Below are positions 29,263 to 62,735 of a stretch of 64,000 nt of DNA, piece by piece; position 1 is the stretch's first letter; every line of letters begins with the position of its first letter. The position numbers and the translations under genes were made by a program. The notes beneath the pieces are model-generated. The model was not told the origin of the DNA and did not search any database. It saw only the letters and a program-made list of their open reading frames with translations. Origin of the DNA: Salpingoeca rosetta (lineage: Eukaryota > Protista > Choanoflagellata); NCBI GenBank assembly GCA_033442325.1, contig JAWQFM010000027.1:999251-1063250 (forward strand). Reading direction: 5' to 3'.

Positions 29263-29396
29263 TTGTGTGTTTGCGTCACGCCATCCGCAAGTTTGCTGTT
29301 TTGCGGTGCTTGCTCACTGACTGTCTTGGAGCAACAAACACACGCTCCATACATCCGAGTCTTGGCGCTGGCCAGTGCGCCCCCACTCGCTCTCTT

Positions 29397-29475
<79 letters not shown>

Positions 29476-30866: not shown

Positions 30867-30921
<55 letters not shown>

Positions 30922-31137: not shown

Positions 31138-31144
31138 AACCTGT

Positions 31145-31182
<38 letters not shown>

Positions 31183-31440
31183 TGTGTGTGTGTGTCTGTG
31201 TGTGTGTCTGTGTCTGTCTGTCTGTCTGTCTGCGTGTGTGTGCATTGCAGTGCCACAGTCTGCTGTTGAATTGTTATTGGCTGTTCTTGGCATCTCTAAT
31301 CTCTTGTGTAAACGACAGTGAACCACAACTCCTGCGCGTCCAACCAGCCACACAAACAAACACGCAAGGCCACAGACGAAGATACATACACGTATATGTA
31401 TGCACAAAGAAGGCAAGAAGTGACATGGCGAGCTGCAACT

Positions 31441-35597
<4,157 letters not shown>

Positions 35598-39353: not shown

Positions 39354-41349
39354 TCATGGCAGGGTTGACAAGTGCGACAAATAGGCGCCCATGTCCACCT
39401 TCACAAACACCTTGGCAAATGGGAGGACCTGCGCCTCTTGCGAAACGACGTACTCCTCAAAGGCAAACGTGCCAGGTGTGGGCGTGGCCTGTAAGTTGGT
39501 GGCGCGTGTCACCTGCGCATAGTGGGTGTCTTGGCTTTCATCAAAAGGCTTCCCATAGTAGGAGCATTCATTCGAGCCATGGGGGTAATCTGCGGCCCGG
39601 GTGATCGGGTATGCCAGGCCAACGCTGGCAGCGCACAGGAGCATCACGTGCTCTCCATTTGCATTGGATGAGCGCAAATCACCATTCAACAAAACACGCG
39701 TGGAGTACCCTGCGGCATAGCTTGTCTGCGGTGTGAGGTAGATGCCAGATCCGAAGAAGCCACGGTCGCCCGGGCTGCTAAAGTTCGCTGCCCCGCACGC
39801 ACTGATGCTGTCAGCGACAGCCTCGTCACACCCATGGAAACCCACAAGGATGTTGACGTGCTTCAAGCCGGTGCGTGTTTTTGCAAACTGCATCTTGAGT
39901 TGTTTGAGCATGGCGCGCTTCTCTGGATCACCAAGCCCAAAGTCCTTGTTGAATTTGTTTGTTGTTTTCGTGTCACCACGACGCGTTGCCGACCGCTCCA
40001 CCTGCGCTTTGAACGCCCGCAGCATCATGGTGGACTTGATCATCTCCACGCGCGACAGGGTGAGGCCCGGCGTCATCCGGCTCTCTATCCACCGGTACAA
40101 GTCAGTGTCTGGTGGCAGTGGTGCTGAATACACTCCATGTTCACTTGGCCCCCTCCATGGAAGCTGCTCATCAAAGGCATCGTCGAGCCGCCATGCAGGG
40201 TGGTGCCATTCGTGGTCGCGCAACTGCCAAGACGGCATGACAGGTGGCGGATGCGCGGGCGCCTGCAGCAACAGATCGCCAACGCGATCGGACACTGGGT
40301 TCTGGCTTTCCCTGTGGTGCGTGGACGTGACGAGCTCGTCTGGGTCCTTGCCTGTCAGGTCCCCAAGCTTGTGAGCGGCTGGGTATTTCTCGTGGCGCTT
40401 CAGGTGTTTTGTGCTGAGGACGAGGTGGACATGGTCAATCCCTCTTGCTTCCCCTTGTAGCACAGACAGCACCTGTCATCAACACCGCAAGTGAGCAGAG
40501 GATGGAATGAGGGTGAAAAATCAAAGCTGGCCATTCGCTGGCAAGTGAAGGGACAACACAACGCAAGCTCACACACAACACACACACGCCCACAAGCACT
40601 CACATTCGCTCACAAACTGACTTTTGTCATGAACGGCAGGGCCTTGTGCTCTGCGCCAGAAGGCGCCCGCACCCAGACGTCCACTTCTCGTTCGCCTCGC
40701 AGCAGTCCGAGGCACTGCACGCCATCGTGTTCACAGAAAAAGGCGTCTGGCCACACCTTCAGCGTTGCGCCAAAAGACTTGTGCAACAAAGTCTGCACGT
40801 GTGGGAAGAAGCCAGGTGGTAATGCAAGTGCTTTGCTCTCGACCACCAGCAGTCGTCCACCGTAGACGGGCCAGAAGCCCGTTCGAGGCCAGGCGGTTGC
40901 GAGATCGGCCTTCTTCTCAACACGGCTCGGCAGCATGAATTGCCGCTGGCCATCGTTCGAAGGCGGCAGCTCGAAGCAGAGGAGCGTGTGCTGCAGCACG
41001 CTGATGACAAGATCTGCGGTGGCAATGCCTCGGAATGCGGTTTCCAGGTCCGTGAAGGTCACGACGCCTTTCTTTGTGATGGAGCCTTGCTGCACGCCAT
41101 CCGGCGTCAGCGCTCTCCCCAACACGTCATGAAGCAGCCAGTTCGGGTCGACGAAGACGAAGTCCGCCAGGGAGGGCGTGCTGGAGTACCAGAGCAGATC
41201 GCCGCGTGTGTGGAGGTACCTGTGGACATGCAAAAAGTATGGGTTAGCAGGGAGTGGAGGGTGTAAACGCGCAACACATGATTGAGGGATGAAAGTGTGA
41301 CTACCATGAAACTCCTCAACTCCTACGGCCAAACACACACGCACACACG

Positions 41350-41408
<59 letters not shown>

Positions 41409-44400
41409 ACACGCACACACACACACACACATACACACACCAAAAGCACACACGCACACATTGTACTTGCCTGAGCGTTTGGTGGAAGGTGCCCTCTTGG
41501 ATCGCGGAGATGAGGTCGATGCCATTCCCGCTGCCACGAACAAAGTCCAATAAATCACCCACGCTCCACATCGCCTTGTTCTTCACTGCTTTCTTTAAGG
41601 CCCCTGCCACTTCATTCACCACCTGTGGCACCAACACCTCTCGCCCTCTCAGCCAATGCCAATGGTCAACAAGCTGTGATCGGAGCACATCAAAACCGGC
41701 CTCGCCGCCCTGATGGCAGTTGAGAGTGATGAAGCTGTCTTGGATATCGACGATGTCGCCAAATAAGAGCGAAGAACCGGGTTTGGTTGATTGTCTCCTC
41801 AGGTCCGCGACCATCGCTGTACCCCAGGGCGGATGACCATGTTCATCAACAAGCGCCTTATCGCGAGCAAGATCCCTCTTGGTGCCCGCGATCACGACGC
41901 GCGGCTTCACCTCTTCCATGGCACCGCCGTCTGCCGTTGCTGTGGCTGCTGCAATGCCCTGCTGCAGTCGCGTGCAGATGAACTGCAGCCAGTAGTTGGC
42001 GCGCTCCTTCACATGTTCTTTAGGCTCAGAGAGGTCGACGCAGACGACAAAGGCAGCGAAGCGATCCGACATCATCAGCGTGTGGATGACGTGATATGCG
42101 AGCTGCCCACCAAAATCGTACACGCGAAGAGAAGCAGCGTTGTCACCGTCGCTGCCTTGGCTTGTGGTGTCTTTCAGCTTCATTTCACACACCCGAATGC
42201 CGGGTGTGCGCTCGTTTGAGCGGTCTGGGTCATTTGCTGGTTGGAAGATGGTCCGTGTGAAGCGGCGAAACAGACTGCCGGGAAGCGACTCAATCATGGT
42301 CGTCTTGCCGATGCCGTAGTCGCCGCAGACGAACACCTTCGCTGTCTCAAGAGGGACGGAGCCTGTTTCTAGCAGCCTGAGAAGATCGAGCCGGTCTTGA
42401 TAGGCGGCCTTGGCGGAAGAGTCAAACTTGTCCTCTGAATCAAAAGGCCTGAGGAGAAGAAGAAAGCAGAGTGGACGGTGAATGAGGTTCGGTGTGAAGG
42501 GTGGTTTGAACAAGAGTAAGTCTGTCACTGTACTGCTGTACGAACTCACGCGAAGACAACGTTGATGTCTGGCTGCTTGGTGCGGAGCGTGGCCAGTGCA
42601 CGGGCAACTGCAGTGGAGGATTTGAGCTTGTCCTCAAACAGCCTGTGATGCCGTGAAGAGGGAATGTGAGATGAAAGAAATTGAACTGAAATTGATTCGG
42701 TGCATGTGGGTGGAGCAAGGTCGCAAGCACACGAAACTCACCGAATCTTAGCCTTGGCGTCGATGTGTTGCAGCTGCTTCAGCACATTGACCATGCCACG
42801 CTCCGTGATACGATTGCGGCCAATGCTGTTGGATGAGATGGAGAAACAGGTGAGTTGGCGACAGGAACGAAGCGGGTCACTGTTGCAATCAGGAACACGC
42901 CCTACTTGCTTGCACCAGGTACGAGCGGCGGCAGTGACAGCGCAACAGCGACGCAGCCCATTTCCATCCATACATGTACATGTGTGCGTGTACACACTCA
43001 CCCGAGCCATGTGAGGGTCGTGTTGTGCTTCAGCATCTCCGCCAACGCCACAGCGCCCTCATCGCCGATGGAGTTGGCCCCCAGGCTGTCAAGATAATGT
43101 GATGCCACACAAAGCGATGGTGCCACATGGGTGAGGAAGAGTGAGTAAGTGCGTGATGATGATTGCTGTGGGTGGCAACACAGTCGTTGAACCACACATG
43201 GGCACATGTGCACATGATAAGGTGCAACAGCAGTGACGCAGCATACATGTGCATGTATGCATGTCCACACTCACTTGAGTCCTGTGAGGGTCGTGTTGTG
43301 CTTCAGCATCTCCGCCAACGCCACAGCGCCCTTATCGCCGACGCGGTTGCGTTCCAGGCTGTCCAGATGGTATAATGCCACGAAGGGCGATGATGCCACA
43401 TGGGTGAGGAAGAGTGCGTGAGTGATGATGATGATTGCTGTGGGTGGCAACACAGTCATTGAACTCATCCTACCCCACCACACGTGTGCACATGAAAAGG
43501 TGCAACAGGCAGTGACGCAGCATACATGTGCATGTGTGCGTGTACACACTCACAAGAGTCGTTCGAGGGTCGTGTTGTGCTTCAGCATCTCCGCCAACGC
43601 CACGGCGCCCTGGTTGCCGATGGAATTGCCCTCCAGGCTGTCAAGACGGTATGGCGAATGCCACACAGGGCGATGATGCCACATGGGTGAGGAAGAGGGA
43701 GTGAGTGCGTGATGATGATTGCTGTGGGTGTCAACACAGTCATCAACCACACATGTGCACATGATAAGGTGCAACGGCAGTGACGCAGCCCCTTTCCATC
43801 CACATATGTGTGCGTGTACACACTCACTAGAGTTCTTTGAGGGCCGTGTTGTGCTTCAGCATCTCCGCCAACGCCACAGCGCCCTCATCGCCGATGGAGT
43901 TGGCCCCCAGGCTGTCAAGATAATGTGATGCCACACAAAGCGATGGTGCCACATGGGTGAGGAAGAGTGAGTAAGTGCGTGATGATGATTGCTGTGGGTG
44001 GCAACACAGTCGTTGAACCACACATGGGCACATGTGCACATGATAAGGTGCAACGGCAGTGACGCAGCATACATGTGTGTGTGCGTGTACACACTCACTT
44101 GAGTCCTGTCATGGTCGTGTTGTGCTTCAGCATCTCCGCCAACACCACGGCGCCCTGGTCGCCTATGGAATTGTTGTCCAGGCTGTCAAGATGGTATGAT
44201 GCCACACAGGGGGATGATGCCACATGGGTGAGGAAGAGCGTGATGATGATTGCTGTGGGTGGCAACACAGTCATCAATCCACACATGTGCACGTGATAAG
44301 GTGCAACGACAGTGACGCAGCATACATGTGTGCATGTGTGCGTGTACACACTCACTAGAGTGTTTCGAGGGCCGTGTTGTGCTTCAACATCTCCGCCAAC

Positions 44401-45652
44401 GCCACGGCGCCCTCATCGCCGATGGAGTTGTTGTACAGGCTGTCAAGACGGTATGGTGGATGCCACACAGGGCGATGATGCCACATGGATGAGGAAGAGT
44501 GAGTGAGTGAGTGCGTGATGATGCTCGCTGTGGGTGGCAACACAGTCATCAACCACACATGTGCACGTGAGAAGGTGCAGGGGCAGTGACGCAGCATACA
44601 TGTGTGCGCATGTGTGCGTGTACACACTCACCTGAGTTCTTCGAGGGTCGTGTTGTGCTTCAGCATCTCCGCCAACGCCGCAGCGCCCTCATCGCCGATG
44701 GAATTCCATCGCAGGCTGTCCAGATGGTATAATGCCACGAAGGGCGATGATGCCACATGGATGAGGAAGAGTGAGTGCGTGCGTGCGTGATGATGATTGT
44801 TGTGGGTGGCAACACAGTCACCAATCCACACATGGGCACGTGTGCACGTGATAAGGTGCAACAGGCAGTGACGCAGCACACATGTGTGTGTGTGTGTGTG
44901 TGCGTGTACACTCACCTGAGTCGTTCGAGGGTCGTGTTGTGCTTCAACATCTCCGCCAACGCCACAGCGCCCTCAGGACCGATGGAGTTGCCCCACAGGC
45001 TGTGCAGACACACAAGAACCGCAGGGAGCGACGGTGAACACACGTCCAAACATGCGCAAGCAGGGGAGGAGAAAGGGGTGCAACATGCAACACCGCCATC
45101 CCAATCAACCATGCATATCACACGATGCAGATTCATCATCACCACGCACTAGAGTCGTTTGAGGCAGGTGTTGTCCTTGAGCGCCTCGGCCACCGCACGC
45201 GCCTCAATGGCGCCGAGGCCATAACCACCCAAGCTGTAATTCCAAATGGTGTGTGTCATGAAATGAGCAAGAAGACTGAGGATCGAGACAGAGCAAAACC
45301 ATGAGGGTGCCAGTCCCAACCTGCCACAAACACACACAGTGTGTCCAGGCGGTGCGAGGGGACAGGACACACACGTGAACACCCAACAGCAAGCCACACC
45401 ACGCTCATTGCAACACAAGGACAAGCCAAGCAGAGAGAGAGGGGAGAATAAGCACAACCACAACAAGTGTCCTTGTGTCCAACACATACATGTTCCAACA
45501 TGTCGTTTTGGTTGCTTTTGCACTCACTTCTCATAATCCCCACACGTGTTGTTGGCGATGGCCCTGATCTTGTGCTTCACCCCATCCATCAGCTTCGTCT
45601 GCGCCAGCAACGCCTCCACCTCCTCCCTCGCTCTCTTCTCTCCGCCGGACAT
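39354..45652 (-). CDS. ROCO protein: RI-like LRR array - Roc GTPase - COR - PARP-like ADP-ribosyltransferase; 15 exons, 1250 aa. Exons 45652-45528, 45233-45150, 44999-44916, 44715-44632, 44439-44356, 44182-44099, 43911-43828, 43637-43554, 43358-43275, 43085-43002, 42825-42742, 42642-42550, 42448-41471, 41219-40622, 40472-39354
   Basis: All junctions are phase-compatible and the spliced length is 3753 nt, or 1251 codons. Roc motifs: GDYGIGKTT (G1), RTPGI (G2), YDFGGQ (G3), GTKRD (G4). COR segments: YLHTRGDLLWY, VFVDPNWL, FMLPS, LPPGFFPHVQ. ART motifs: GFHGC, GFFGSGIYLT, YAAGYS, FEEYVV...QVLP. Confidence 0.93.
43002..44999 (-). repeat. Tandem array of eight exon+intron cassettes (84-nt LRR exon plus 173-200-nt homologous intron, period 257-284 bp)
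   Basis: The exon core cgtgttgtgcttca(g/a)catctccgccaac and intron motifs (gccacatgg.tgaggaagag; gatg..tgctgtgggtggcaacacagtc; aaggtgca...cagtgacgcagc; cactcac) recur in every unit. Confidence 0.97.
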
Positions 45653-46597
45653 GGCGACGGCGCGTCGTCTTTTCTCCTTGTGGCTTGTTGTGACGTGCTC
45701 GTGAGTGGCTGGAAGAAGAGACGACGACAAAATGGACGACGACTCAACGCGCTGCTTTTTGTTTCCTTTGTTTTGTGTGTGTTGTTGTTGTTTTGCGACT
45801 CAGCCATTGGACGATTCGCAAAACCTTACAGAGGTTATCCGCACAGCAGCGCTTCCGTGGAAGATGTTCGTCAACAATCTCTTCGAGCCCTCGTTGTCGA
45901 CAGGAACACAACAAACAAACAGGATGAAGTGCGTCCAGCCAGCAACCCGACTCTCTTGTCGCCGAAAGGAACAACAGCCGCGCCCTCCTCGCTTGGCCTT
46001 GCCTGGTTGGTACAACACACCAATGTCTGTAGCCACATCAACACCACAAACATCACCGCCGCTCCACCACCACCACCGTCAAGCGGGTCTCATCATCTTC
46101 ATCGAGCCATTTACTGAGGAAAGAACAGGTCCGCCACACAACCCACAAACAACGCCCCCAGCCCAACACACATCAACACACACACATCCACACATCCACA
46201 CACACAGCAGTGCCCAAATGCAACAGGAAGCCAAGCCAACCAAACAACAGCCAACCCCTCTGCACATCAAACAACACCCTCCAGTCACAAGCCAGAATCA
46301 AACACACACAGCAGCAGCAGCAGCACACATCCACCAACCACACCAAGAACGTGTTCAGCCGTACACAGCGCCAAACAATGAAAACAACAGGCAAGCACAA
46401 GAAGGGCGTGACATAAGCAAGCAAGCAAGCAGGCGAGAGGGAGAGTGAAGGAAGGGAAGAACAGAAGAGAAGAGAAGAGAAGAAGAGGGAAGAGAACAAG
46501 AAAGGGAAACAAGAGGAATGCGACAAAGGAAGCGACAGCCATTCAGCCATTCCTCCAACTGGTGCACAAGTTGACACGACACATCACAACATGGCGA

Positions 46598-49500
46598 CTA
46601 CGCGGACGAGCTAAGTGCCTCAACAGCGCGCTGCACGCGGGCGTGCGCCTCGGGATCCTGCATCAACTGCCCCAACACACCGTGGGCAGGCGAATCCTGC
46701 ATGTTCTACGAGAGGAAACGACACGAGGGCGTGAGAATGAGGAGAGGAAAGAGGAGGAGTGTGAGAATGAGGAGGAAGAGGAGGATGGGAAAGTGCACGA
46801 AGTACGCGACAGTCGCGCATATTCGAGGCAGCAAACACACACCCACACACACACACACATCACATAAATCACACACAACACAACCCACGCACCATGAGGC
46901 TGTGTACATGCCCTGGCAGTGGGGCTCGTCGACGGCGGCCGCGGGGGTGCCAATCACCTGCACAAACAAACGCCCGCACAATCTTCACCGGGCTCTCAGG
47001 CGCGGTCACGCGTGGATGTTGCCGACTGAAGCAACAACAAAAGGAAGGAGAGGTACAGGAAGCAATGGGGGAGGGGACGTGGGTCAGTCGGGAACAAGAA
47101 CGACAGGCGGCAGAGCACACCACCGACACATGCACACACACACACACACACACACATACACACATACACAGACACACACAAAACACGGTCGTAGCACTCA
47201 CGCTTGGAGGAGCTCGACGAGGTGTGTGAAGATGTACTTTGCCTCATCGTCGTCTTCTGTAATGGGCAGCCAGTCAAGCAGATGTGTCAGCACCTCGTCT
47301 GTGCAAGGGTTGGTGGTGGATGGGTGGGTAAAGAATAAGCGACGACAACGTGATAACAAGAGCAAACAACCAACGCAAAAGGACGGCGAAGGAGTGTACC
47401 AACGCACGCACACACACACACACACAACCACACACACCTCTGAGAGGCCGTGTGCTGGGTTGCGTGCAATCTTGACAAAGACGGAGATGCAGTTCTTGGT
47501 CGCGCTGGTGTTGGGCGATTCGCGGGAGCCGGGTACCCTGGATCACAGCGAGCAGCGACTCAACAGCCTGAACGCGGCAGGACGACAAGGGGTGGCAGTG
47601 AGGCTTGGCAAGCCGAAAGTGGAGAAAGGAGGGAAACGACGAAGCGACATGTTCGGACATGTTCACTCACTCACACACACATACACACACACACTCTCTC
47701 TCTTGACCTTGAGCGCACCTTGTGTGGATGTACGAGGGTTGTGGATCCTCCTCCTCAATCTGGGCGGTACTGGCTCGCATAATGCGCATGAGCTCGTGTG
47801 CATCCGGCGCAAACATGTCCTTGCAGACAGACACGCCCATCAGGCCGCGCAGCATGCGGTATTGCCTGTCGTTTGCGTGTTGGAAAATGTTCTTCATAAA
47901 CGGCACAGAATCGTTGTCGTAGTCCAAGAACCGCTCCTGCGCCACGTTGGCCAGCACATGCATGCGAACCAGAAACACGATGGCCACCTCCTTGCTGCCG
48001 CTGCAACCAGTGAGGAGTGCAAGCACACCATCACCTCGTCAACTGCCGCTGTTGTTGTCATGGCGTGCAGCACCACCACATCAACCGCCACAATCACGGC
48101 CAATCCCTCTTCCAACAACAGTGTGGTGGTCCACGAGCCAACAGCATCCAACGCAGTGAGCTGCTTGAAACCGGCAGTGTGCAGTGACGGCTGTGGCCGC
48201 GGGGTGTGATGCCTCGCTGGCACAAGATGAGGTGGCGGAACACAGCAGCAGTTGTGGTTGAAGCTGAGGTGATTGAGATGGGCAGGGAGAAGCACAGCTA
48301 GCAGCAGCGGGAAACTGGCTGGCAAAGGGCCTTGAGTGCACCGCCACAACGCCGCGCAGGACAGCAAGCAGTGCAGCTGTTGCTGTGTCAATGTGGTGTG
48401 GTTGACGATGGCGTGAACACGCATGCATGCACACACAGAANNNNNNNNNNNNNNNNNNNNNNNNNNNNNNNNNNNNNNNNNNNNNNNNNNNNNNNNNNNN
48501 NNNNNNNNNNNNNNNNNNNNNNNNNNNNNNNNNNNNNNNNNNNNNNNNNNNNNNNNNNNNNNNNNNNNNNNNNNNNNNNNNNNNNNNNNNNNNNNNTGCT
48601 GCAGCAGCAGAGCCTGCGCTGGGCCCGAATCGGTGTGAGCACGCGTGCAACGGGAGGGTGGGGAGCAAGATGCAGCGCCCCACTGGGCGGGGGGTGATGC
48701 GACCTGTGTGAAGACACAAAAGGAGAGAAGGGAGAACTGACGATTAGAAGCTGTCGTGCACGACGTGCCAGTGCAGCCCTGCATCAGCACATTGGGGGCG
48801 TTGAATGGTGTTGTATTGACGAGGCGTGGTCGGTGTGCGTGGTTGCTTCGACATGCGGGAGGGGCAACGAGTGCAAATGAATTCAATCACACACATACAC
48901 ACACACATACACACACACACACGTTTTGTGTGGCGCTGGGAGCGATGTCTGCTGGTGCGTGTCAACCAGCAGTGCCAGTGGTGTCAGCCATGGCGGCATG
49001 GAAGCGGAAGTGTGGTGGTGGGATCCTTCACCTCAGTGCACATTCCAGCCACCACGCTGGAGACCACGGGCTGGCTCACTGTCTCCATGCCCGTGCATGG
49101 CACCGACCACCGTCTGACAGCGGTGATGACAATGTCAGCGGCCTGCTCTGAAGCAAGCACACATCGTGACAGGGGTAAAGGAGAGAGAGTGTGTGTGTGG
49201 GGGGGGGTGTGATTGACGAGGGGAGGTGGTTGACAAGAACAAGGACGTGCTGAGGGGAGAACTTGGGGAGGAGGAGTGCAAACTGTGGTGTGCATGTCGC
49301 GTCACGCAGCGCATTGAGGTGCAGTGCAGTGGAGTGGAAATCCCAGGCAACACCCCCCACGTCATCAGCCATGCACATACCAATACAGAGCGAGAGAGAA
49401 GGAAGTGCCTCTTGTTGTCGTGGCACACGGTGATGGCACGCGCTCAAGGACACGGTGCTGTCATTCAAGCCACCATCATCATCCTCATCGTCAGCCTGCA
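46598..49500 (-). pseudogene. Importin-5 (IPO5/Kap121)-like degenerate gene relic
   Basis: Fragments: ADDEDDDG..DS; ANVAQERFLDY...VPFMKNIFQHANDRQYRMLRG[deletion]LMGVSVCKDMFAPDAHELMRIM...EEEDPQPSYI; SATKNCISVFVKIAR; DEVLTHLLDWLPITEDDDEAKYIFTHLVELL. Frameshifts at about 47535 and 46965. Large internal parts are missing. TAG at 46598-46600. Confidence 0.7.
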
Positions 49501-50353
49501 AAACAGGTGGTGGTGGTGGAGATGAAGACGCGCAGCGTTGCAGCCAAAAGCAAAGGGGGAGGTGAGAGGCATGTGACTTGAGATGTGTGAGTGAAGGGGG
49601 GGGTGAGTGGAGAAGAGAGGGTGTGCAGAGAGCAGGTCAAGCAAGGGGTGTGCAAAGGAAAGAAAGGGAGAGTGGACTGCGAGGCAGGGAGGAACAGTGT
49701 AAAGGAAGCAGAGCTGTGAGTACAACACACACGCACGCACCACGTGGTGGCCGTGTCGCTCGTCCAAGTGGAGTGAATGAATACACGTCCCTTTGTTTGG
49801 CTTGCTTGCTCGCTTGTTTGGCTTGCTCGTCTGCTTGATTGATTGATTGATGGATTGCATGTGTCATTGTCGTCATCAGCAATATCCCCCCTGCGGCTCC
49901 CTGCTGCTGCTGCTGCTGTTGTTGCTATTGTGGCTGAGTGTGACCAAACCACCACCGCCAACCACCACGACGCACCTTCCCATCCATCCTTTCCTTTCGT
50001 CGCAGCGAATGTGTGTGTGTGTGTGTTCGTGCATTGCGCGCAACCAGCGTGTCTGTGCAGAAGAAGACGGGAAAAGCTGAAATCAGTCGATGACACGACG
50101 ACTGTGGAGATGTAGCAGCCCAAACTCGCTTGCTTGCACTCGCTTCTTCTTCTTCTTCTTGTTCTCTTTGGTGCAGTGCACACAGCGAGGCAAGGCAAGG
50201 CAAGGAAGGAAGGAGGGGGTGATGTGGCAGTCACCGCAACAGCAGCATGGGGAGAAGAGAGATGTGGGAGAGGGGAAGAGGAGATTGTTGGCGATCGCTA
50301 CCCAGTCACCAACAGCCAACCAGACCAATGTGGAAGAATGGTCTTTGACGCAC

Positions 50354-50458
<105 letters not shown>

Positions 50459-50539
50459 CACACACACACACACATGCACACACACATGCACACAAAGTAG
50501 GCGTCACGTCAACGATCCCCAGGTGAGCCAACACACATC

Positions 50540-53500
50540 ATGCCCACTGTTCCTTTCTCGACTTCTGCTTCTTGTTCTTCTTTTTCTTGGGCACTATTCG
50601 TTCGCTCCATGCGTCAGGCAACCAAGTATGTGAACGTGGGACGCGGTGTCCTGTTTGTGGTGACAGTGCTGTCGGTTGTTGCTGTTGCTGTCTTGTTGTG
50701 GGTGTGGATGTGGACTCCCTTCTTTCCTTCTTCTTGTGGCACAAGGATGTGTGCAGGGGGCTGTGGGTCTGCTGAAAGTGGTGGTTTCGTCGTCGTCAGG
50801 CCGTCGTTGTTGTGCTTGGCTGACGTGAGCATGTGCTGTTCTCTTGTGATTGGACAAGGCAGTGGCCTGCAGAAACCTAACGACGCTCTTGAGAGTGCAC
50901 TGGCAACACGTGCCGCTGACACACGCACACCACAAGGCAAGCGACAAGCAGTGTCACTCACGGCCACCTGCGAGGTGGGTGCAATCACACCTCCGCTCAT
51001 GTGTATGTTGTGCATGTGTGTGTGTGTGTATCAGTGCACGGTGGTGATCCGATATCCAAACCACAACCACTGCTGTCACTGCTGCTGCCTTGCTGCTGCT
51101 GGTGCTGCTGCTGTTGGCACGTGTATTCTCACGGTTGCATCGTCTCTTCCTCCCACGCAAACAACAAACAGACAGGAATCGGCAAGTGAGAGTGGCGGAG
51201 ACCAAGGCACCAGCAACACAGAAGGCCGCGTTTGAGTGGGACGCACCTCCACAGCGGTACCGGGCGAGCAATCACAGCATTTGCGCTGACATCGGTCAGT
51301 CTTCTCTCGTGATTACAGTCACACGTCATTCATCCCCCAGTTTGCCATCAAGTCAGTTTACATGGCATGCACGCTGTAGGTGCTCATCACCTGCCCCATG
51401 CACACGTGGTTTTCACACACACACACACCCCACAACAGCCCGCTTGCGCGGCATCATCTCGCTGGACATGAGTGTTGGGGATGATGATGGAATGCCCCCG
51501 TCTCATCATGTCTCATCATGACAGTGAGCGACGTGTGTGTGTGTGTGTGTTTCTCGTTTCGCTCGGCAACCGTGTGATGACGGCTTATCACTCTTGCGCA
51601 CGTTCCCTCGCTCACTGCAACACCCATCTCGCTACTGTTAACGACCAGGTTGCCATCCACTGGATGCCCTTGGTTGCGTCGATGGGGCAGAGTGTTGGTG
51701 ACATTGGCAAGATGCTGCTCGTGGCGGGACAGAGCGAATGCTTTCAAAAGTATGCGCACACTGTATGTGTAAGCGTGTGTGAATATGTGTCGTCGACGTG
51801 GTCATTCTGCCATGCGTCTGCTGTGGGTTCTTTGCTTGCAATCGTTTGATCTTGTGCTACGATGTGTTGTCCTGATCTCTGTTCCTCGTGTGTGTTTGGG
51901 CCACAGGGTACGCCTTCAGCTGAAGAGAGGAAGGGGAGGCGCTGCTCCGGCACAAGGATGATGGTGACATGAGGTGCGACCACCGAATTGTGTTTTTGTT
52001 ACGGGTGCATTGCCGCCGCCGCCGCTGCTGCTGCTGCTGCTGCTGGTGGTGGAGGTGTGCACACTGAANNNNNNNNNNNNNNNNNNNNNNNNNNNNNNNN
52101 NNNNNNNNNNNNNNNNNNNNNNNNNNNNNNNNNNNNNNNNNNNNNNNNNNNNNNNNNNNNNNNNNNNNNNNNNNNNNNNNNNNNNNNNNNNNNNNNNNNN
52201 NNNNNNNNNNNNNNNNNNNNNNNNGTGTGTGTATGTGTGTGTGTACCCGTATGTGTGTGTGTGTGCGTGTGTGTGCAGCAGTTCGTTGCAGATATCTCCC
52301 AACACTCCCCCCATCCCCTTTCATCCGCGCGTCTCACCACACAACAAACGCAGCCATCGTCTCCACCACAACCACCACTGTTACCAGAACGCACTGCCCC
52401 GAGATGCCGCTGCACTATCGCACTGCCAATGACGGCCCTGATGTCAGCGATCACCGCACGGCATATCCGTCGATCCTCTTCGCACGTGCCCATCGTTCAA
52501 GGTGAAGACCTGCCAACACAGCAACAGCAACAGCAACGGCGTGGAATGGCGTGCAACCGAAGCATGATGACCTCACACTCTCTGCCTGCTTGTGTGTTAT
52601 GATTGCGTGTTCATGCGTGCGTGCATCTATGGCAGGTGTACGTGTATCCTCTGACTGCTGATGAAGAAGCCACCTCTGCCAGCCATCTACCGCGCCATCC
52701 GAACCGCCATCCGTGACGGCCCATACAGCACCGATGACCTGTCCAAGGCTTGCCTCTTCGTTCCAAGCACAGACGTACCGTGCTGGTGTGTGTGTGTGTG
52801 TGTGTTTGTGTTTGTGTTGTGTGTGTGTGTGTGTCGCGTCGGTGCAGATGCACGGGCTTCCACAGCCGTCACCATCACCACCACCACCTCATAATTGTGT
52901 GTGCGTGCTTGTGACTGAAAGATTGCATGCACGACAAGTACTCTGACAACATTGAGTCGATTCATCCCGTGAGCGCAGCCATCGAGCGCAATCTCTCCAG
53001 CTGAGGTGGTGGTTTGTTGTTGCTTGTAGTGCTGGTGGTGCTGGTGGTGCTTGTGGTTCTTGGTGTCGTGCGTGTGAGAGGACCTGTGTTCATGGCTGCC
53101 TTCCAAACACACACACACACACACACACACACAACAATACATGTGATGCATGGCAGACTTGCGTATTGGAATGAGGGCCGCAACCACATCCTGTTTGAGT
53201 ACAGCGACGCACCATGTCTCCCCTGGGATGCAGAACACGGCATTCTTGCAAAGGTACAATGTGTATGTGTGTGTTGGAACATGACTGTGCGTGCCTGCGC
53301 TCACCATCTACGACTGCTGTTGCTTGCCGCCTTGTTTCGCATCACCACCTGCATCAGGTTGGCCTGAGCGAATTCCACCATCGCAATGGCCTCGGTGTGT
53401 CCATGCCACTCTGCTCCCTGGACGGCATTCATTCACACCGGAGTAACGACGCGTTCCGCCCGCACAAACAGGAAATACCTCGTCATCTTCAGGTCTGTGC

Positions 53501-54101
53501 ATGTGTGCATGCGTGCGTGTTGTGACGTGGTGTGATGTGGGGTTCAATGTTCACTGCTGCTGCTGCTGGGTTTTGAGAGGTTGGTGTCGCTTAATGCACC
53601 ACCACTCGCCCTTCTTGTGCCACTGCGATCTCACTCCAAACCTGTCGGGGTGCCGCTGCTTGACATGTGTCTTCTTTCCCTGTTGTGCAGGGGCACCACC
53701 AAATCTGCTCGCTCTCATGTCATGCGCAACCACCTCCCCAAGCTGCACAACGGTAGGTGTGGTGTGCTACGCGTGTGATGTGTTGTGTGTTATCGTGTGT
53801 TCCGTGTGTGTGTCGTGCGTTGCCTTGGCATCAACAGATTTTGGTGCTGCGTGTGTGTCTGTCTGAATCCACCTCACACACACACACACACATCGCCTGT
53901 GTTTGTGCGTTTGCAGGGACATTGTGTTGGTGTGCGCGTGCCAGTGGTTTGGCGAGGAGCGCATGGGCCGTGAGGGGGAAGATGGGATATGACCCCTCGT
54001 GCACGCAGGCAGAGGAAGAGTTCAACAAGTACGCGTGCACGGATCTCGAGCTGAAGACCAAGTTTGGGCTCATCGGGGAAGGATTTGGCGACCACTCCTT
54101 C

Positions 54102-54188
<87 letters not shown>

Positions 54189-54334
54189 GCAGATGATTTC
54201 GGTCCTGTTCGTGCTCTCACCCGCCTTCCATCTCCTGTCACCCCCCTTCATTCCTCATAGATCATGGCTGCGGGTGCCATCCCGTCATTGTCGTCGACCA
54301 CTACGTGCTGGTGCGTATGGATGAATGGCACATG

Positions 54335-54367
<33 letters not shown>

Positions 54368-54405
54368 CGCGTGTGTGTGTGTGTGTGTGTGCGTGTGTGT
54401 GCGTG

Positions 54406-54468
<63 letters not shown>

Positions 54469-54964
54469 GTGTGTGCGTGTGTGTGCGTGTGTGTGTGTGT
54501 GTGTGTGGAAATGTACCCCTCCCGTCGCTCATGGCGCTGCGATGTGATGTTGTGGCGTTTGCTTTTTGCATTCTTGCAGCCCTACCAGGACCTGCTGGAC
54601 TGGGAGACGTTCAGCATTCGCATTCCCCGAGCACAGGCTCCTTGAGGTGTGGTGACAGATCGTTGATATGGGCATGTGAAGTGATGCGTGAGCGGGTGAT
54701 GTAGTTTGATGGGGATTGTGGTTGTGATGGCTTGCATGGCACGTCGCTTACACACTCACGCACGATCACACACACACACACACACACATACAACTGCGGT
54801 TAGCTTCCGAAGATCCTGGGGGCCGATCCCCTGAAGGAGGGGGGGGAAAATAAAGGTGATGTAGTTTGATGGGGATTGTGGTTGTGATGGCTTGCATGGC
54901 ACGTCGCTTACACACTCACGCACGATCACACACACACACACACACACATACAACTGCGGTTAGC

Positions 54965-55013
<49 letters not shown>

Positions 55014-55340
55014 CTCTGCGTTCAGCTTCCGAGGATCCTGCGGTCGATCCCTGATGAGGTGGTGGAGATGATGCCGAAACGCGTTGTGTTGTGTTTGAGA
55101 AGTTCTTCAAGTCCCTCTCCACCCAAGTGCACACAGGTGAGGGAGCGAGTCATTGGCACAGGGAGTTGTGGAGTGTGGCAACGTGTGCGGTGCAGTGTGT
55201 GCGTTGTTCGCTTGTTCTCGTGTCCATTTAACCAACTCTCACCATCTGCCACTCGTGTGTCTTGTCTGTGTTGTTTGCTACTGTCAGCGCTGGAGTCTGC
55301 CAGGATCAACCTTTTCAGCGGCGACAACGCGTGGCAGGTG
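50540..55340 (+). pseudogene. Exostosin (GT47)-like glycosyltransferase, multiply frameshifted
   Basis: Signal anchor at about 50640-50700. Segments: CPSFK|VYVYP; YRAIRTAIRDGPYSTDDLSKACLFVPSTD; YWNEGRNHILF; GILAK; GVSMPL; RKYLVIFRG; LPKLHNG; TKFGLIGEGFGDHSFR; MAAGAIP; PYQDLLDWETFSIRIP; LPRILRSIP. Frameshifts at about 52680, 53960, 54282, 54625 and 55090. Confidence 0.75.
54695..54966. repeat. About 110-bp direct duplication (period 160) of an intron 3' end plus a degraded exon start
   Basis: ggtgatgtagtttgatggggattgtgg...caactgcggttagctt starts at both 54695 and 54855. Confidence 0.9.
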
Positions 55341-57290
55341 TGTGTGTGTGTGTATGTGTGTGTGTGTGTGTATGTGTGTGTGTGTGTGTGCGTGTGTGTC
55401 GACGTGCGTGTTCTCTTCTCCACCCATCCACACGCCGTCATCACCACCTCCTCATTTTCTCATGTGTGTTTGCTGACATCCTTCCCTTCCCATCCTCAAC
55501 ACCGGCACCAATACCACCCTCCACGCTTGCTTCTCCTTCCTTCTGCTGTCGCCACACATAGGGCCCTTGAGCCAGCAGATGTCACCCCTCCTGCACCAAC
55601 CACCACTGCTCTGATGGGATGAACAGACGAGCGCTGCCATGCGATGACCATCCAGCCACGCTTGTGCGGCTGTGGAAGCAGCAACACCAACACACACAAA
55701 CAAGCAAGCGATGAGCAACGTGAGTGCATCTCTGCACATGCATGCGTGTGTGTGATGAGCACAGCACCAGTGCGCGTGTCTGTGATCGCTGTCTTTGTTG
55801 CTCCTGTCTCTCCCCCTTGTTATCCCACATCAACGTGTACATGTGTGTGTGGTGGCTGCCTGTTTTGCCTTGCTTGATGCGCTGTCTCATTCGTCGTTCT
55901 CACACACAACTGCCTGCACACCTGCACATTCTCCAACTTGCAGTCACTGCTCGTCTTTCCCGCTCTTTCTCGCCCTCCCTGACGGCCATCACAACAACAA
56001 CAACAGCAGCAGCAGCCAACACACCCTCCACCGCCGATGCTGCAGAGATGTGCAGGAGGAGGTGGACGCGACCACCACCATCACTTGCTGCTGAACACAT
56101 TCCCCAACCAACAAACCTATCGCCCGCTGCTGCTGCTGGCGGAAGCTGGCTGTTTGCAGCTGGGAACAGGTGGCGACAGCACAAGTTGCATTTTCGGCAG
56201 CAGCAGGTGAGGGCGAGAAGCAAAGAGGGAAAACGGAGAGGAGATGTGTGTTGGCTGGATGGATGGATGGATGGATGAGGTGGGGTGGGGGATGCTGGGT
56301 GAGTGTGGTGTGGCTGGCTGGCTGGTGACAGAGGACAGTGGTGGTGTTGTGAGGAAGAGGAAGGTATGGATGGATGGGAGGGGGTGCAGCATGTCTTGTT
56401 CCTTCCCTTTTGTTTTCTGTTTTCTCCCTCTTCCCTTTCTTCTTCACACACATGCATGCACAACATCAGCAGTGGCAGCAGCAGTGTAGCTGTGCACATA
56501 TTCATGCTCCCTCTTCCCTCCCACTCACTCACCGTGCTGGGGCTCGCACACAACCACGCTCACAGGCGATGCACACGCACAAGCAGCAGGATGAGGGAAA
56601 TGTCGAGGATACTTGCCACGCGTGCCAGGTGCACTCGCCTCACACATGGTATGTGGGTGGTGATGAGTGGTTGTTGGTTGTGTGATGGAGTGTGGGGATG
56701 GGGTTGTGGTGATGGGGTGAAGTGAACAAGAGGAAGAGGGGTTGATGGGGGGGATGATGGACACACACATCGACACACACGCACACACGTGGTGCGTGTG
56801 ATGTCAATCACTCGTTCTGCTGTGCTGACATGATGGCTTGCTCTGTGCCTGTTGTGTTGTGTTCCCATCCACGTTCCCTGCAACCACACACACACACACA
56901 TATGCACAGGTGGTGAGGTAGCAGCACACATCAGGATGTTGATGGAAGCGGGCTCGCATGCCGGCTGCTGCTGTGTTCATGCAGTGTTCCCATATGCGTG
57001 AGCAAGGTGAGTCCATTATGGATGCTTTGGTTGGCACATGGCGCGTGTGTTGTTGTTGTTGCTCTGGGTGTGCTTGTTGTTGCTGCTGCTGTGCCTGGTG
57101 TATCAGCATAGCTGCGCCGCTCACATGTCATGCGTGTTTGTGGCTGCTGGGGCGAATGCGTGAGGATCGTTGGAGGATGATGGGCGGTGCACACATGATG
57201 GGTTGGGAGGAGCAGCTGTGGACACACACGTCCATGGTCATGGTGGGCACATCCAACCACAGCGACGCAATCATGTGCAGGTGCGTGTGC

Positions 57291-57403
<113 letters not shown>

Positions 57404-59022: not shown

Positions 59023-59088
<66 letters not shown>

Positions 59089-62000: not shown

Positions 62001-62702
62001 GCACCGTGAGTTTGGGTGAGTTCTATCAATTGGTTTGACTGCTGTGTGGGTGCGTGTATGGGTGTGAAGGATGGAGAGGTGGGACGTGGCTGCGGTGGGT
62101 GCTGTGATCTCACACGCACTCCTGCTGCTGTGGATGCATTTGGCTCACACGCACAGAAAGGGAGGATGGGTTGCATCGACCCACACACATGAGTGTGAAA
62201 ACACACACACACACACACACGCTGACAGGCAGTCTGATGCCATCTCACGGTGCGTTGCACTTGCATGTGCGTGACTGTGCGTGACTGTGACTGTGTGTAT
62301 GTCGTTCATGCTGTGTCTGCTTGTGATTCGCACTGTGTGTGTGTGTGGTGACTGCCTGCTTCCCCCTGTCTCACACACATGTGTATGTATGGATGCTGAC
62401 ACACACGCAGACACACACACACAGTGGGTGTGCGTGCAGACACACATCCCCACACAGCCAGGCAAGGCAGGCACCGCATACTCTTCTTTCTCTTTCTTCT
62501 CTCCCTCTCCCTCTCCTGCTGCCACTACCGCTGCTGCATGGATAGACCAGTGGATGCAAGGCGTGTGGATGATGCTGCCTGGCTGATGTCCTTCCGTTGG
62601 TACGTGTGTGTGTGTGTGTGTGTTGCGCCACTGCTGCTGCTCTTGTTTCCCCTGTTTGTGTCTGTTGTGTCTGTTGTGCGTTGCTGCTTCTGTGTGTGTG
62701 TA

Positions 62703-62735
<33 letters not shown>

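What the first reader, a model, noticed from the sequence alone, without database searches (positions are those of the whole stretch)
42742..45233. One-LRR-per-exon cassette array: ten consecutive 84-nt symmetric phase-2 exons, eight with co-duplicated introns
Seen: exons 45233-45150, 44999-44916, 44715-44632, 44439-44356, 44182-44099, 43911-43828, 43637-43554, 43358-43275, 43085-43002 and 42825-42742 are each exactly 84 nt (28 aa). All are phase 2-2 and all begin with C after the AG. Any exon can therefore be skipped, duplicated or swapped in frame, giving up to 2^8 combinations for the near-identical eight. Their introns are homologous to one another, whereas other introns in the window are unrelated microsatellite-filled sequence. 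Established: exon-per-LRR shuffling has been described for brown-algal (Ectocarpus) ROCO genes, and vertebrate NLRs also have LRR-exon periodicity. Inference: this is a receptor-diversifying device working by unequal crossover, gene conversion or alternative splicing.
Basis: partly seen in the sequence, partly recalled or inferred. Interest (0 to 1): 0.88.

Follow-up and report, generated by a model that had tools for sequence, protein, structure and literature searches.

The report
Subtelomeric LRR exon-cassette receptor gene family
The sensor end of a Salpingoeca rosetta ROCO gene is built from interchangeable 84-base exons, one leucine-rich repeat each, that have been duplicated and recombined among about two dozen copies near chromosome ends, the same design already known from brown algae, ciliates and vertebrate NOD-like receptors.

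Summary
Ten AG/GT-bounded 84-nt phase 2-2 exons lie at the stated coordinates. My 15-exon model matches annotated S. rosetta PTSG_09285 exactly: RI/NOD-type LRRs, Roc, COR, PARP-like domain.

The array is not unique to this gene.
- The exon core occurs 115 times in the genome, at about 24 loci.
- At least 20 loci lie within 80 kb of a contig end, all transcribed away from the end.
- They sit in an 84-94% identical subterminal duplication.
- Paralogs carry 2-9 core cassettes, joined to Roc-COR-PARP, ANK-Roc-COR-TIR or TNFR-Cys/ANK bodies.

Introns intermix among loci and some are identical between contigs. A recombination test is significant and dead cassettes exist. Variation is confined to the beta-strand x positions, where dN is about eight times intron divergence.

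So evolutionary diversification by unequal crossover and ectopic conversion is well supported. Alternative splicing is not: the short reads come mainly from paralogs and show no clear exon skipping.

The design is known from brown-algal ROCOs, Tetrahymena 90-bp LRR exon arrays and vertebrate NOD/NLRC genes. A fish NLRC3 has the identical 84-nt phase-2 register; a coral NLRC3-like gene has none.

Verdict: a new member of a known kind. Other first-stage notes of this scan cover this same stretch.

The parts
45528..45652 (-). Coding exon 1 (ATG at 45652-45650, 125 nt, ends in phase 2). Part of the 5' module shared with all paralogs.
   Evidence: The piece 45234-45652 (exon 1 plus the first intron) is 86-92% identical to 10 paralog loci.
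45150..45233 (-). Cap LRR exon (84 nt, phase 2-2), a distinct class. A positionally conserved counterpart is present at 11 of the 12 array stretches analysed; the C13 1709-1713k stretch does not show one.
   Evidence: With intron 1 it is 93-97% identical to paralogs. Intron 1 forms its own clade.
43002..44999 (-). Eight core cassettes. Exons are 44999-44916, 44715-44632, 44439-44356, 44182-44099, 43911-43828, 43637-43554, 43358-43275 and 43085-43002, each with a homologous intron of 173-200 nt.
   Evidence: All are AG..GT bounded, start with C and are phase 2-2.
42742..42825 (-). Tenth 84-nt LRR exon, degenerate and terminal, phase 2-2.
   Evidence: The structure model places a strand at residues 320-324 followed by capping helices.
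42550..42642 (-). 93-nt linker or cap exon, also phase 2-2.
41471..42448 (-). Roc GTPase exon (978 nt, phase 2-2). It is followed by an intron with a GC donor at 41470-41469.
   Evidence: Pfam Roc E 1.5e-9. Donor context CAG|GCAAGT.
40622..41219 (-). COR exon.
   Evidence: Pfam COR-A E 4.4e-8, just under the curated cutoff on the exon alone. Also found on the whole protein.
39354..40472 (-). Last exon, carrying the PARP-like ADP-ribosyltransferase domain and the stop codon.
   Evidence: Pfam PARP E 3e-6. There are 12 paralogous copies in the genome.
43845..44054 (-). 210-bp tract exactly identical to 43019-43228. It covers the 3' 143 nt of intron 5 plus the first 67 nt of exon 6, matching intron 8 and exon 9. 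This is the footprint of a recent conversion or duplication whose boundary lies in the exon core.
45485..64000 (.). Distal subterminal block running to the contig end. It is collinear and 84-94% identical with the flanks of paralogous arrays on six other contig ends.
   Evidence: C13, C14, C23, C26, C28, C29. The contig end equals window base 64000.

Best explanation
The array is the ligand-sensing end of PTSG_09285, a Salpingoeca rosetta ROCO protein. Its order is RI/NOD-type LRRs, Roc GTPase, COR, then a PARP-like ADP-ribosyltransferase.

Each 28-residue LRR is one 84-nt exon. Every intron is phase 2 and splits the codon in the middle of the beta-strand (x27-L28 | x1-L2-x3). Any gain, loss or exchange of whole units therefore stays in frame and keeps the horseshoe fold.

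The gene is one copy of a subtelomeric family of about 24 loci and at least 115 cassettes. All copies share the same 5' module: promoter side, exon 1 and the cap LRR. The near-identical exon cores and the introns of about 185 nt (about 88% alike) act as homology for unequal crossover within arrays. They also allow ectopic gene conversion or crossover between chromosome ends.

This changes cassette number, reshuffles which beta-strand determinants sit side by side, and has joined the same sensor cassettes to different signalling bodies (Roc-COR-PARP, ANK-Roc-COR-TIR). Selection keeps the solvent-exposed strand residues diverse while the scaffold stays constant.

Shown here: the structure, the family, its location, the mosaicism and the site-specific diversity.
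Inferred: that the diversity serves recognition of variable ligands (candidate immune or non-self sensing), and that recombination is ongoing rather than only past.
For: Structure and annotation:
- The exon geometry is confirmed and is identical to the annotated protein.
- Domains are confirmed by Pfam. The LRR class is confirmed against solved structures: RI at 2e-36, NOD2 at 2e-38.
- The AlphaFold model has mean pLDDT 82.7, with strands every 28 residues covering unit positions 27, 28, 1, 2 and 3.

Family size and location:
- A two-unit exon-plus-intron query finds 108 matches at 68-87% identity in the same genome.
- A 32-nt exon core finds 115 sites against 0 in the control; 44 of them are perfect matches.
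- The window is the last 64 kb of contig C27, and the gene lies 18-24 kb from the end.
- At least 20 of 24 loci lie within 80 kb of a contig end (binomial P 3e-11). All 20 have their 5' end toward the contig end.
- The distal 18 kb is collinear with six other contig ends.

The cassettes themselves:
- All 82 LRR units at 12 array stretches (11 loci if the two adjoining C13 stretches are one array) are 84 nt, AG..GT bounded and start with C. Core cassette number ranges from 2 to 9 and from 2 to 8 in annotated paralogs.
- The 5' module is shared with every paralog. The 3' part is shared only with the PARP subfamily.
- Other paralogs carry ANK-Roc-COR-TIR or TNFR-Cys/ANK bodies.

Recombination:
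- Introns from different loci intermix on the tree. Identical introns occur between C32 and C36, between C35 and C13, and within C34 and C28.
- The PHI-like test gives 0.344 observed against 0.464 +/- 0.016 permuted, P 0.0005, with Rm at least 27.
- There is a 210-bp perfect tract inside this array.
- The Roc exon is closest to the C28 copy and the PARP exon to the C34 copy.
- Decayed cassettes exist in the C15 and C14 paralogs.

Site-specific diversity:
- Amino-acid entropy is concentrated at positions 3, 4, 26 and 27. The split-codon position 1 also varies, as seen in the junction residues.
- At the hypervariable codons dN is 0.99. Intron divergence is about 0.125, scaffold dS is 0.157 and scaffold dN is 0.019.

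Expression:
- RNA reads lie on the minus-strand exons and not on intron-only bins. Joints from paralog mRNAs fall exactly on the predicted exon edges.
Against: - No direct observation of recombination in progress: no population, clone or long-read data were available.
- The contig ends with these genes that I read lack assembled TTAGGG. 'Subtelomeric' therefore rests on position, orientation, the shared block and the genome paper's statement that most telomeric scaffolds share repeated regions (PMC4054682).
- Repeat families can themselves cause assembly breaks, which would inflate nearness to contig ends.
- The dN-versus-intron contrast compares non-orthologous repeats that undergo conversion. 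It shows maintained diversity rather than a clean rate of positive selection, and dS at the hypervariable codons is saturated.
- The ligand and the biological role are unknown.
- Expression of this copy is low in the three RNA runs.
Confidence: 0.78

Rival explanations
1. The array works mainly at the RNA level. Regulated or stochastic skipping of the symmetric exons produces many receptor isoforms from this one gene, as proposed by the first reader and as reported for brown-algal ROCOs and human NLRP3.
For: - All LRR exons are phase 2-2 and of equal length, so any skip stays in frame.
- Alternative splicing of LRR exons is reported for Ectocarpus ROCO genes (PMC11378527) and for NLRP3 (PMC6642158).
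- Some read joints link non-adjacent exon cores of this array, for example 43076 to 43562.
Against: - Equally frequent joints 'go back' in the array, which linear splicing of this gene cannot produce.
- The junction letters that were shown decode as adjacencies of paralogs or carry letters that differ from this gene: C4 LKEL-f-LYNN, C35 LEKL-n-LWDN, C15/C36 LKTL-f. The skip-like joints are explained the same way.
- Every cassette has consensus GTGAGT donors and ACAG acceptors with short introns of about 185 nt. This setting gives no hint of weak, regulated exons.
- The public RNA-seq-based annotation has a single full-length product.
- Short reads cannot resolve this, so the idea is untested rather than excluded.
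Confidence: 0.1
2. The array is a neutral by-product. Subtelomeric segmental duplication and tandem slippage copy whatever lies there. The cassette structure has no adaptive role, and surface residues vary only because they are unconstrained.
For: - The whole 18-kb distal block, not only the array, is 84-94% identical among chromosome ends.
- Intron identity between loci (88.5%) is in the same range, so intron conservation needs no special function.
- Dead cassettes exist.
Against: - Diversity at the strand x codons (nucleotide pi 0.6-0.75, dN 0.99) is about 5-8 times that of the introns next to them. Scaffold codons show dN/dS of 0.12. Relaxed constraint cannot exceed the neutral level.
- All 82 units examined keep an open frame, exact length and intact splice sites.
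Confidence: 0.1
3. The array, or its copy number, is an assembly artefact of a repetitive region.
For: - The assembly has N gaps nearby (48441-48596 and 52069-52224).
- Reads and contigs of other runs differ from the reference at several fixed sites.
- One DNA-like contig joins 44297 back to 43496.
Against: - Units differ by 7-21%, which read lengths can resolve.
- The frame is intact through all ten exons and matches the independent annotation.
- Eleven other loci show the same design with their own unique sequences.
Confidence: 0.02

Closest known systems
Brown-algal (Ectocarpus, Saccharina) LRR-ROCO genes with exon-shuffled LRRs (Zambounis et al. 2012, PMC3341825; Teng et al. 2024, PMC11378527)
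   Same: - LRR-Roc-COR proteins with one LRR per exon.
- All exons are of equal length and phase 2.
- Variable repeat number, inactivated exons, and diversifying selection on the concave face.
- Proposed role as candidate immune receptors.
   Different: - Their exon is 72 nt (a 24-residue LRR class), with the LxxLxLxxN strand inside the exon. Here the exon is 84 nt, the LRR is RI/NOD-type, and the intron splits the strand.
- Brown-algal ROCOs are reported to be LRR-Roc-COR only. Here there are C-terminal PARP-like or TIR domains.
- Here the introns are co-conserved, and the family sits in a shared subterminal duplication.
- Alternative splicing is reported for brown algae and is not shown here.
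Tetrahymena LRR genes with arrays of exactly 90-bp exons (Xiong et al. 2019, PMC6564038)
   Same: - Tandem arrays of equal-length LRR exons separated by phase 2 introns.
- Young exon/intron repeat units still alike at the DNA level.
- Enrichment in subtelomeric (and pericentromeric) regions.
- Unequal crossing over proposed as the mechanism, with fusion to other domains.
   Different: - 90 bp against 84 bp.
- Thousands of genes against about two dozen loci.
- An association with a LINE-like retrotransposon is reported there. It was not looked for in detail here and none was noticed.
- Those authors thought the category unique to Tetrahymena.
Vertebrate NOD/NLRC receptor LRR exons (Hoss et al. 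2019, PMC6642158)
   Same: - RI-type 28-residue LRR, one per exon, with the exon border inside the beta-strand.
- Tested here: anchovy NLRC3 has 13 consecutive 84-nt exons in exactly the same register (1 base + LxxN...LxxL + 2 bases, phase 2-2).
- Up to 16 of 27 residues are identical to one S. rosetta core cassette, exon 2.
   Different: - The switch domain is NACHT in animals and Roc-COR here. No NACHT is detected in PTSG_09285.
- Vertebrate introns are kilobases long and were not checked for similarity.
- A coral NLRC3-like gene encodes its LRRs in one exon, so continuity of the exon design across animals is not established.
Subtelomeric fast-evolving receptor or surface gene families, for example common-bean NLR clusters (PMC6102362, listed, abstract only)
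   Same: Location at chromosome ends, ectopic recombination between ends, and rapid turnover of recognition genes.
   Different: There, whole genes are the unit of exchange. Here, sub-genic exon-plus-intron cassettes are also exchanged.
Lamprey variable lymphocyte receptors (from general knowledge, not tested)
   Same: LRR cassettes are used combinatorially to vary a concave binding face.
   Different: VLRs are assembled somatically from flanking donor cassettes by a deaminase-linked process. Nothing here indicates somatic rearrangement, and the cassettes are ordinary spliced exons.

Membership tests
ROCO proteins | Roc GTPase domain immediately followed by a COR domain in one polypeptide | tested here: met
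   Pfam Roc (PF08477) at residues 390-514 and COR-A (PF16095) at 674-776 of PTSG_09285. The COR-A score is 34.2 bits against a 35.3 curated cutoff, so it is marginal. Paralogs score well above the cutoff.
ROCO proteins | GTP binding and hydrolysis by Roc | not testable with these tools
   A P-loop GDYGIGKT is present in the translation.
RI-like (ribonuclease-inhibitor / NOD-type) LRR class | 28-29-residue repeats of the form LxxLxLxxNxIGxxGAxxLAxxL that fold as strand plus helix | tested here: met
   LRR_6 at E 8.6e-45. PDB sequence hits to RI (1dfj, 2e-36) and NOD2 (5irm, 2e-38). The model has strands and helices alternating every 28 residues.
Exon-shuffled LRR cassette arrays (brown-algal ROCO / Tetrahymena type) | One LRR per exon, equal exon length, symmetric intron phase | tested here: met
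   All 10 of 10 exons here, and all 82 of 82 units at 12 array stretches, are 84 nt and phase 2-2.
Exon-shuffled LRR cassette arrays (brown-algal ROCO / Tetrahymena type) | Cassette number and order differ among paralogs, with evidence of exchange | tested here: met
   2-9 core cassettes per locus, intermixed intron tree, identical cassettes on different contigs, and PHI-like P 0.0005.
Exon-shuffled LRR cassette arrays (brown-algal ROCO / Tetrahymena type) | Excess replacement change at concave-face residues | tested here: met
   dN is 0.99 at positions 3, 4, 26 and 27, against intron divergence of about 0.125 and scaffold dN/dS of 0.12. No codon-model test on orthologues was done.
Exon-shuffled LRR cassette arrays (brown-algal ROCO / Tetrahymena type) | Alternative splicing of the cassettes | tested here: inconclusive
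   Short reads are dominated by paralog transcripts, and no clean exon-skip joint of this gene is seen.
Animal NLR (NACHT-LRR) receptors | NACHT/NB-ARC STAND NTPase upstream of the LRRs | tested here: not met
   No NACHT hit in PTSG_09285 or in the three paralogs scanned. Roc-COR takes the switch position in PTSG_09285 and two of them.
Animal NLR (NACHT-LRR) receptors | NOD/NLRC-type LRR exon design (84 nt, border in the beta-strand) | tested here: met
   Same length, phase and register as the 13 LRR exons of anchovy NLRC3. This is a resemblance of the LRR module only.
Subtelomeric multigene family | Copies concentrated near chromosome ends within blocks shared between ends | tested here: met
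   At least 20 of 24 loci lie within 80 kb of contig ends with uniform orientation, and the 18-kb distal block is shared. Telomere repeats are not assembled at the four contig ends I read (C13, C14, C26, C27).
VLR-like somatic cassette assembly | An incomplete germline gene completed somatically from donor cassettes | not tested
   The germline gene is complete and spliced conventionally. No somatic DNA data were examined.

The most novel reading that the evidence does not exclude
The 84-nt, phase-2, strand-splitting RI-type LRR exon may be one and the same mobile exon module in choanoflagellates and animals. On this reading it was inherited from their common ancestor and wired to different switches: Roc-COR with PARP or TIR effectors in S. 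rosetta, and NACHT in animal NOD/NLRC receptors. The sensor part of animal NLRs, and its exon-shuffling mode of diversification, would then predate animals.

For:
- The intron position matches exactly, 1 of 84 possible positions in the repeat, between S. rosetta and a fish NLRC3.
- Repeat sequences are 33-59% identical.

Against:
- A coral NLRC3-like gene, a fungal RI-like LRR gene and a haptophyte RI-like LRR gene have no such introns.
- Phase-2 LRR exon arrays have also arisen in brown algae and ciliates.
Probability: 0.27. Interest if true: 0.75.

Novelty: new member of a known kind. Interest (0 to 1): 0.6.

Why it matters
Choanoflagellates are the closest living relatives of animals, and S. 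rosetta is their main laboratory model. No NLRs were found for it in the papers searched here.

This finding points to a family of about two dozen sensor-switch-effector genes. They combine LRR sensors with Roc-COR switches and PARP-like or TIR domains, which are both NAD-using enzyme types common in immune effectors. The family has the hallmarks of fast-evolving recognition receptors: subtelomeric location, cassette turnover and diversity held at the binding face.

No paper in the searched library mentions these genes. The family gives a concrete, genetically tractable candidate for non-self recognition in a pre-animal lineage. It is also a third or fourth independent case of the phase-2 one-LRR-per-exon design, which argues that this design is a general route to receptor diversification.

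The architecture itself is not new.

Tried and rejected
- RNA evidence for exon skipping. The single read-laying run at 97% likeness was swamped by reads from paralogs whose exon cores are near-identical. 'Skips' and impossible 'goes back' joints occur together, so no isoform claim can be made.
- Fetching full paralog loci. The paralog analysis therefore rests on 3.5-kb loci and on annotated proteins.
A 32-nt plain pattern was used instead.
- 'Intron-centred module' idea, that the unit exchanged is 3' exon flank + intron + 5' flank of the next exon. It is only partly borne out. The within-locus identical or near-identical intron sets (C28, C34, and this gene's introns 5 and 8) fit it. Overall, though, intron similarity tracks only the downstream exon start (Mantel r 0.33, P 0.0005) and not the upstream exon end (r 0.01).
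- Special conservation of introns or exon cores beyond neutrality is rejected. Scaffold dS (0.157) is about equal to intron divergence (0.125), and both match the identity of the surrounding duplicated block.
- I first read paralogs on C35, C36 and C4 as LRR-ankyrin genes without Roc. Annotated proteins show they are LRR-ANK-Roc-COR-TIR with a divergent Roc.
- Telomere repeats at the ends of C13, C14, C26 and C27: none assembled.
- Coral NLRC3 isoforms P0185 and P0250 were not on record for DNA look-up. A 90%-cluster member was used instead.
- The Alosa NLR locus was too long to fetch.


Full report
**1. The observation**

Each is preceded by AG, followed by GT and begins with C. Each reads as one base, 27 codons and two bases, so every flanking intron is phase 2. 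Joined together they give an open run of 28-residue repeats of the form x-L-x-x-N-x-I-G-x-x-G-A-x-x-L-A-x-x-L-x-x-N-x-x-L-x-x-L.

Tandem Repeats Finder sees 42969-45003 as 7.5 copies of a 273-279-nt unit at 81% identity. Exon-plus-intron units 2-8 are 79-86% identical pairwise, with units 5 and 8 at 92.7%. Unit 9 (exon 9 plus intron 9) is only 62-67% identical to the others. The first LRR exon with intron 1, and the tenth exon with intron 9, belong to other sequence classes.

**2. The gene**

Extending the model gives 15 exons (45652..39354) and a 1250-residue protein. It is 100% identical over its full length to the public protein PTSG_09285 of Salpingoeca rosetta ATCC 50818.

The organism is confirmed by two results. 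The nearest Roc homologues in 1.8 billion representatives are PTSG_ proteins. Recorded contig lengths 1,385,450 and 1,067,092 agree with places seen in this assembly: telomere repeats at C17:1385099-1385360 and contig C26.

Pfam finds LRR_6 (E 8.6e-45), Roc, COR-A and a C-terminal PARP catalytic domain. It is therefore a ROCO protein with an ADP-ribosyltransferase-like end and no NACHT domain. Thirteen of the 14 introns are phase 2, and the Roc exon is itself a 2-2 exon. The Roc-COR intron uses a GC donor.

**3. Structure**

The LRR domain matches ribonuclease inhibitor (1dfj, 2e-36), NOD2 (5irm, 2e-38) and NLRP3 by sequence. A single-sequence AlphaFold model of residues 1-350 has mean pLDDT 82.7 and pTM 0.79. 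It alternates a short strand and a helix every 28 residues.

Strand 96-100 corresponds to unit positions 27, 28, 1, 2 and 3. The splice junction, inside codon 1, therefore lies in the middle of each strand of the concave sheet.

**4. The array is not private to this gene**

- A two-unit query (exon + intron + exon + intron, 545 nt) finds 108 matches in the same genome, most at 72-87% identity and including intron sequence.
- A 32-nt piece of the exon core finds 115 sites at up to 3 mismatches, against none for the reversed control. Forty-four of these are perfect.
- The sites fall into about 24 loci on 19 contigs.

The window is the last 64 kb of contig C27 (1,063,250 bp), so the gene lies 18-24 kb from the contig end. 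With the contig lengths I could obtain, at least 20 of the 24 loci lie within 80 kb of a contig end. The expectation is 19.6%, giving binomial P 3e-11. All 20 point their 5' end toward the contig end: plus strand near contig starts, minus strand near contig ends.

The 18 kb distal to the gene (45485-64000) is collinear and 84-94% identical with the flanks of the arrays on C13, C14, C23, C26, C28 and C29. The S. rosetta genome paper states that most telomeric scaffolds share repeated subtelomeric regions and often lack assembled TTAGGG (PMC4054682). This fits what I see: no TTAGGG at these ends. That paper does not mention LRR genes.

**5. Comparison of paralogs**

At 12 array stretches on ten contigs (11 loci if the two adjoining C13 stretches are one array), all 82 recognisable LRR units are 84 nt, AG..GT bounded, start with C and are phase 2-2. 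Eleven of the 12 begin with the same cap LRR, followed by 2, 3, 4, 5, 6, 8 or 9 core cassettes. Annotated paralog proteins likewise carry 2-8.

The upstream region, exon 1, first intron, cap LRR and intron 1 of this gene are 85-97% identical to most or all of the paralog loci (9-10 loci per piece). The sequence from intron 9 onward matches only the two other Roc-COR-PARP copies that I hold, C34 and C28.

The remaining paralogs continue into a second LRR type and ankyrin repeats. As annotated proteins these are LRR-ANK-Roc-COR-TIR(-SAM), and one is TNFR-Cys...LRR-ANK. Within the PARP subfamily, the Roc exon is closest to the C28 copy (86% aa) and the PARP exon to the C34 copy (89% aa). The genes are therefore mosaics.

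**6. Evidence of exchange**

- A tree of 60 cassette introns groups intron 1 by position but intermixes internal introns from all loci.
- Identical introns occur between C32 and C36, between C35 and C13, three times within C34 and twice within C28.
- On 47 exon-intron-exon units, neighbouring informative sites are more compatible than shuffled ones: 0.344 against 0.464 +/- 0.016, P 0.0005. The Hudson-Kaplan minimum is 27 events.
- In this gene a 210-bp stretch (43845-44054) is exactly repeated at 43019-43228. It ends in the exon core just before the variable 3' end, while the start of exon 5 differs from the start of exon 8 at 10 of 25 aligned columns.
- The C15 copy holds a cassette with a 14-nt deletion, and the C14 copy holds a truncated, frame-shifted one. 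These are like the 'inactivated exons' of Ectocarpus.

I also tested the idea that the exchanged unit is centred on the intron. The within-locus identical or near-identical intron sets fit it: they share the upstream exon end, the intron and the downstream exon start, but not the far sides. Across all pairs, however, intron similarity follows only the downstream exon start (r 0.33, P 0.0005) and not the upstream exon end (r 0.01).

**7. Where the repeats differ**

Among 63 core cassettes, positions 2, 5, 11, 12, 15, 19, 22 and 28 are invariant. Positions 3, 4 and 27 have 11-13 different residues, and position 26 has three in near-equal share. The split-codon position 1 also varies among cassettes. 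These are the x positions of LxxLxLxxN.

| Site class | Measure |
|---|---|
| Hypervariable codons, nucleotide diversity | 0.6-0.75 |
| Introns, mean nucleotide diversity (pairwise identity 88.5%) | 0.114 |
| Positions 3, 4, 26, 27 | dN 0.99, dS 0.70 |
| Positions 6, 9, 10, 24, 25 | dN/dS 2.8 |
| Other 18 codons | dN 0.019, dS 0.157 |

Scaffold dS is about equal to intron divergence. The exon cores are therefore not specially homogenised. Replacement diversity at the strand residues is about eight times the neutral yardstick.

Because the repeats are not orthologous and undergo conversion, I read this as diversity maintained by selection. It is not a measured rate of adaptive substitution.

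**8. RNA**

Three 2026 RNA-seq runs and one contig run were laid on 41400-45700 at 97% likeness.

- First mates lie on the plus strand, which means RNA from the minus strand in the usual stranded libraries.
- Intron-only bins have zero depth.
- The Roc exon has depth 0.6-9, so this copy is expressed at a low level.
- Most joints carry junction letters that differ from this gene and decode as paralog adjacencies: C4 LKEL-f-LYNN, C35 LEKL-n-LWDN, C15/C36 LKTL-f.
- Those joints fall exactly on the predicted exon edges, so the family is transcribed and spliced as modelled.
- Joints that 'go back' are as common as joints that 'skip', so neither can be taken as isoforms of this gene.
- Retention of any cassette intron would give a stop within the first two codons read into the intron.

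Exon skipping therefore remains untested.

**9. What is known**

- Brown-algal ROCO genes have one LRR per 72-bp phase-2 exon, exon shuffling, selection on the concave face, inactivated exons and alternative splicing (PMC3341825, PMC11378527).
- Tetrahymena has tens of thousands of exactly 90-bp LRR exons with phase-2 introns. Young exon/intron units are still alike, are concentrated in subtelomeric and pericentromeric regions, and are ascribed to unequal crossing over (PMC6564038).
- Human NOD and NLRC genes encode one 28-residue LRR per exon, with the border at a fixed place in the beta-strand. NLRP genes encode two per 171-bp exon (PMC6642158, PMC11352923).

I tested the last resemblance directly. 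The anchovy NLRC3 gene (L037) has 13 consecutive 84-nt exons in exactly the S. rosetta register, one base + LxxN...LxxL + two bases. They have 9-16 of 27 residues identical to one S. rosetta core cassette, exon 2.

As controls, a coral NLRC3-like gene encodes NACHT and all its LRRs in one 980-codon exon. RI-like LRR genes of a Mortierellomycete fungus and of a haptophyte are also single-exon across the repeats. Whether the shared design is inherited or convergent stays open.

No paper in the searched library mentions PTSG_09285 or its paralogs, or describes ROCO or LRR cassette genes in S. rosetta.

**10. Verdict**

The splicing reading is unsupported. The architecture has clear precedents, so this is a new member of a known kind in a lineage where it matters for the origin of animal innate immunity.

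Other first-stage notes of this scan describe the same stretch. I tested their main points here.

Noticed in passing
window 41220-41470 (minus strand): The intron between the Roc and COR exons has a GC donor (CAG|GCAAGT) instead of GT, and contains a 128-nt (AC)n microsatellite (41333-41460). The annotated protein requires this splice.
   Followed up: partly
window 45485-64000: The whole distal 18 kb, including the neighbouring multi-exon gene that ends near 46600 (no domain search was done on it), is duplicated at 84-94% identity on at least six other contig ends. Assembly gaps (N runs) lie at 48441-48596 and 52069-52224.
   Followed up: partly
window 41579, 41585, 41965, 42040, 42247, 42609, 45204, 45574, 45588: At these sites all or nearly all RNA reads differ from the reference. 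At most of them the contigs of a DNA-like run (X1) differ too. This suggests reference errors, strain differences or an unassembled near-identical copy.
   Followed up: no
G000:C27:5977-6852 (other end of the same contig): A partial PARP-like exon, 64% identical over residues 80-366 of this gene's last exon, lies 6 kb from the opposite end of contig C27 with no Roc hit beside it. It is probably a truncated family member.
   Followed up: no
G000:C15:13764-14238 and G000:C14:1681335-1681876 (in L007, L010): These are decayed cassettes inside enlarged 'introns' of paralogs. One has a 14-nt internal deletion and the other is truncated and frame-shifted.
   Followed up: partly
paralog proteins P0163, P0168 (PTSG_10661, PTSG_08524): A second ROCO subfamily uses the same N-terminal cassettes but continues as ANK-Roc-COR-A/B-TIR, with a SAM domain in PTSG_08524 only. 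Both annotated genes on the 1,067,092-bp contig (PTSG_08524, PTSG_08722) are of this type, and that contig (C26) carries cassette arrays near both ends.
   Followed up: partly
window cassette introns, e.g. 44631-44440: With phase-2 introns and GTGAGT donors, the split codon closes on the G of the donor and the next codon is TGA (for donors after TA, the split codon itself reads TAG). Every retained cassette intron would therefore terminate translation at once.
   Followed up: yes
L037 (Engraulis encrasicolus NLRC3 locus), 18475-36660: There are thirteen consecutive 84-nt phase 2-2 LRR exons separated by introns of about 0.3-3.8 kb. Twelve of the 13 begin with T or C.
   Followed up: partly
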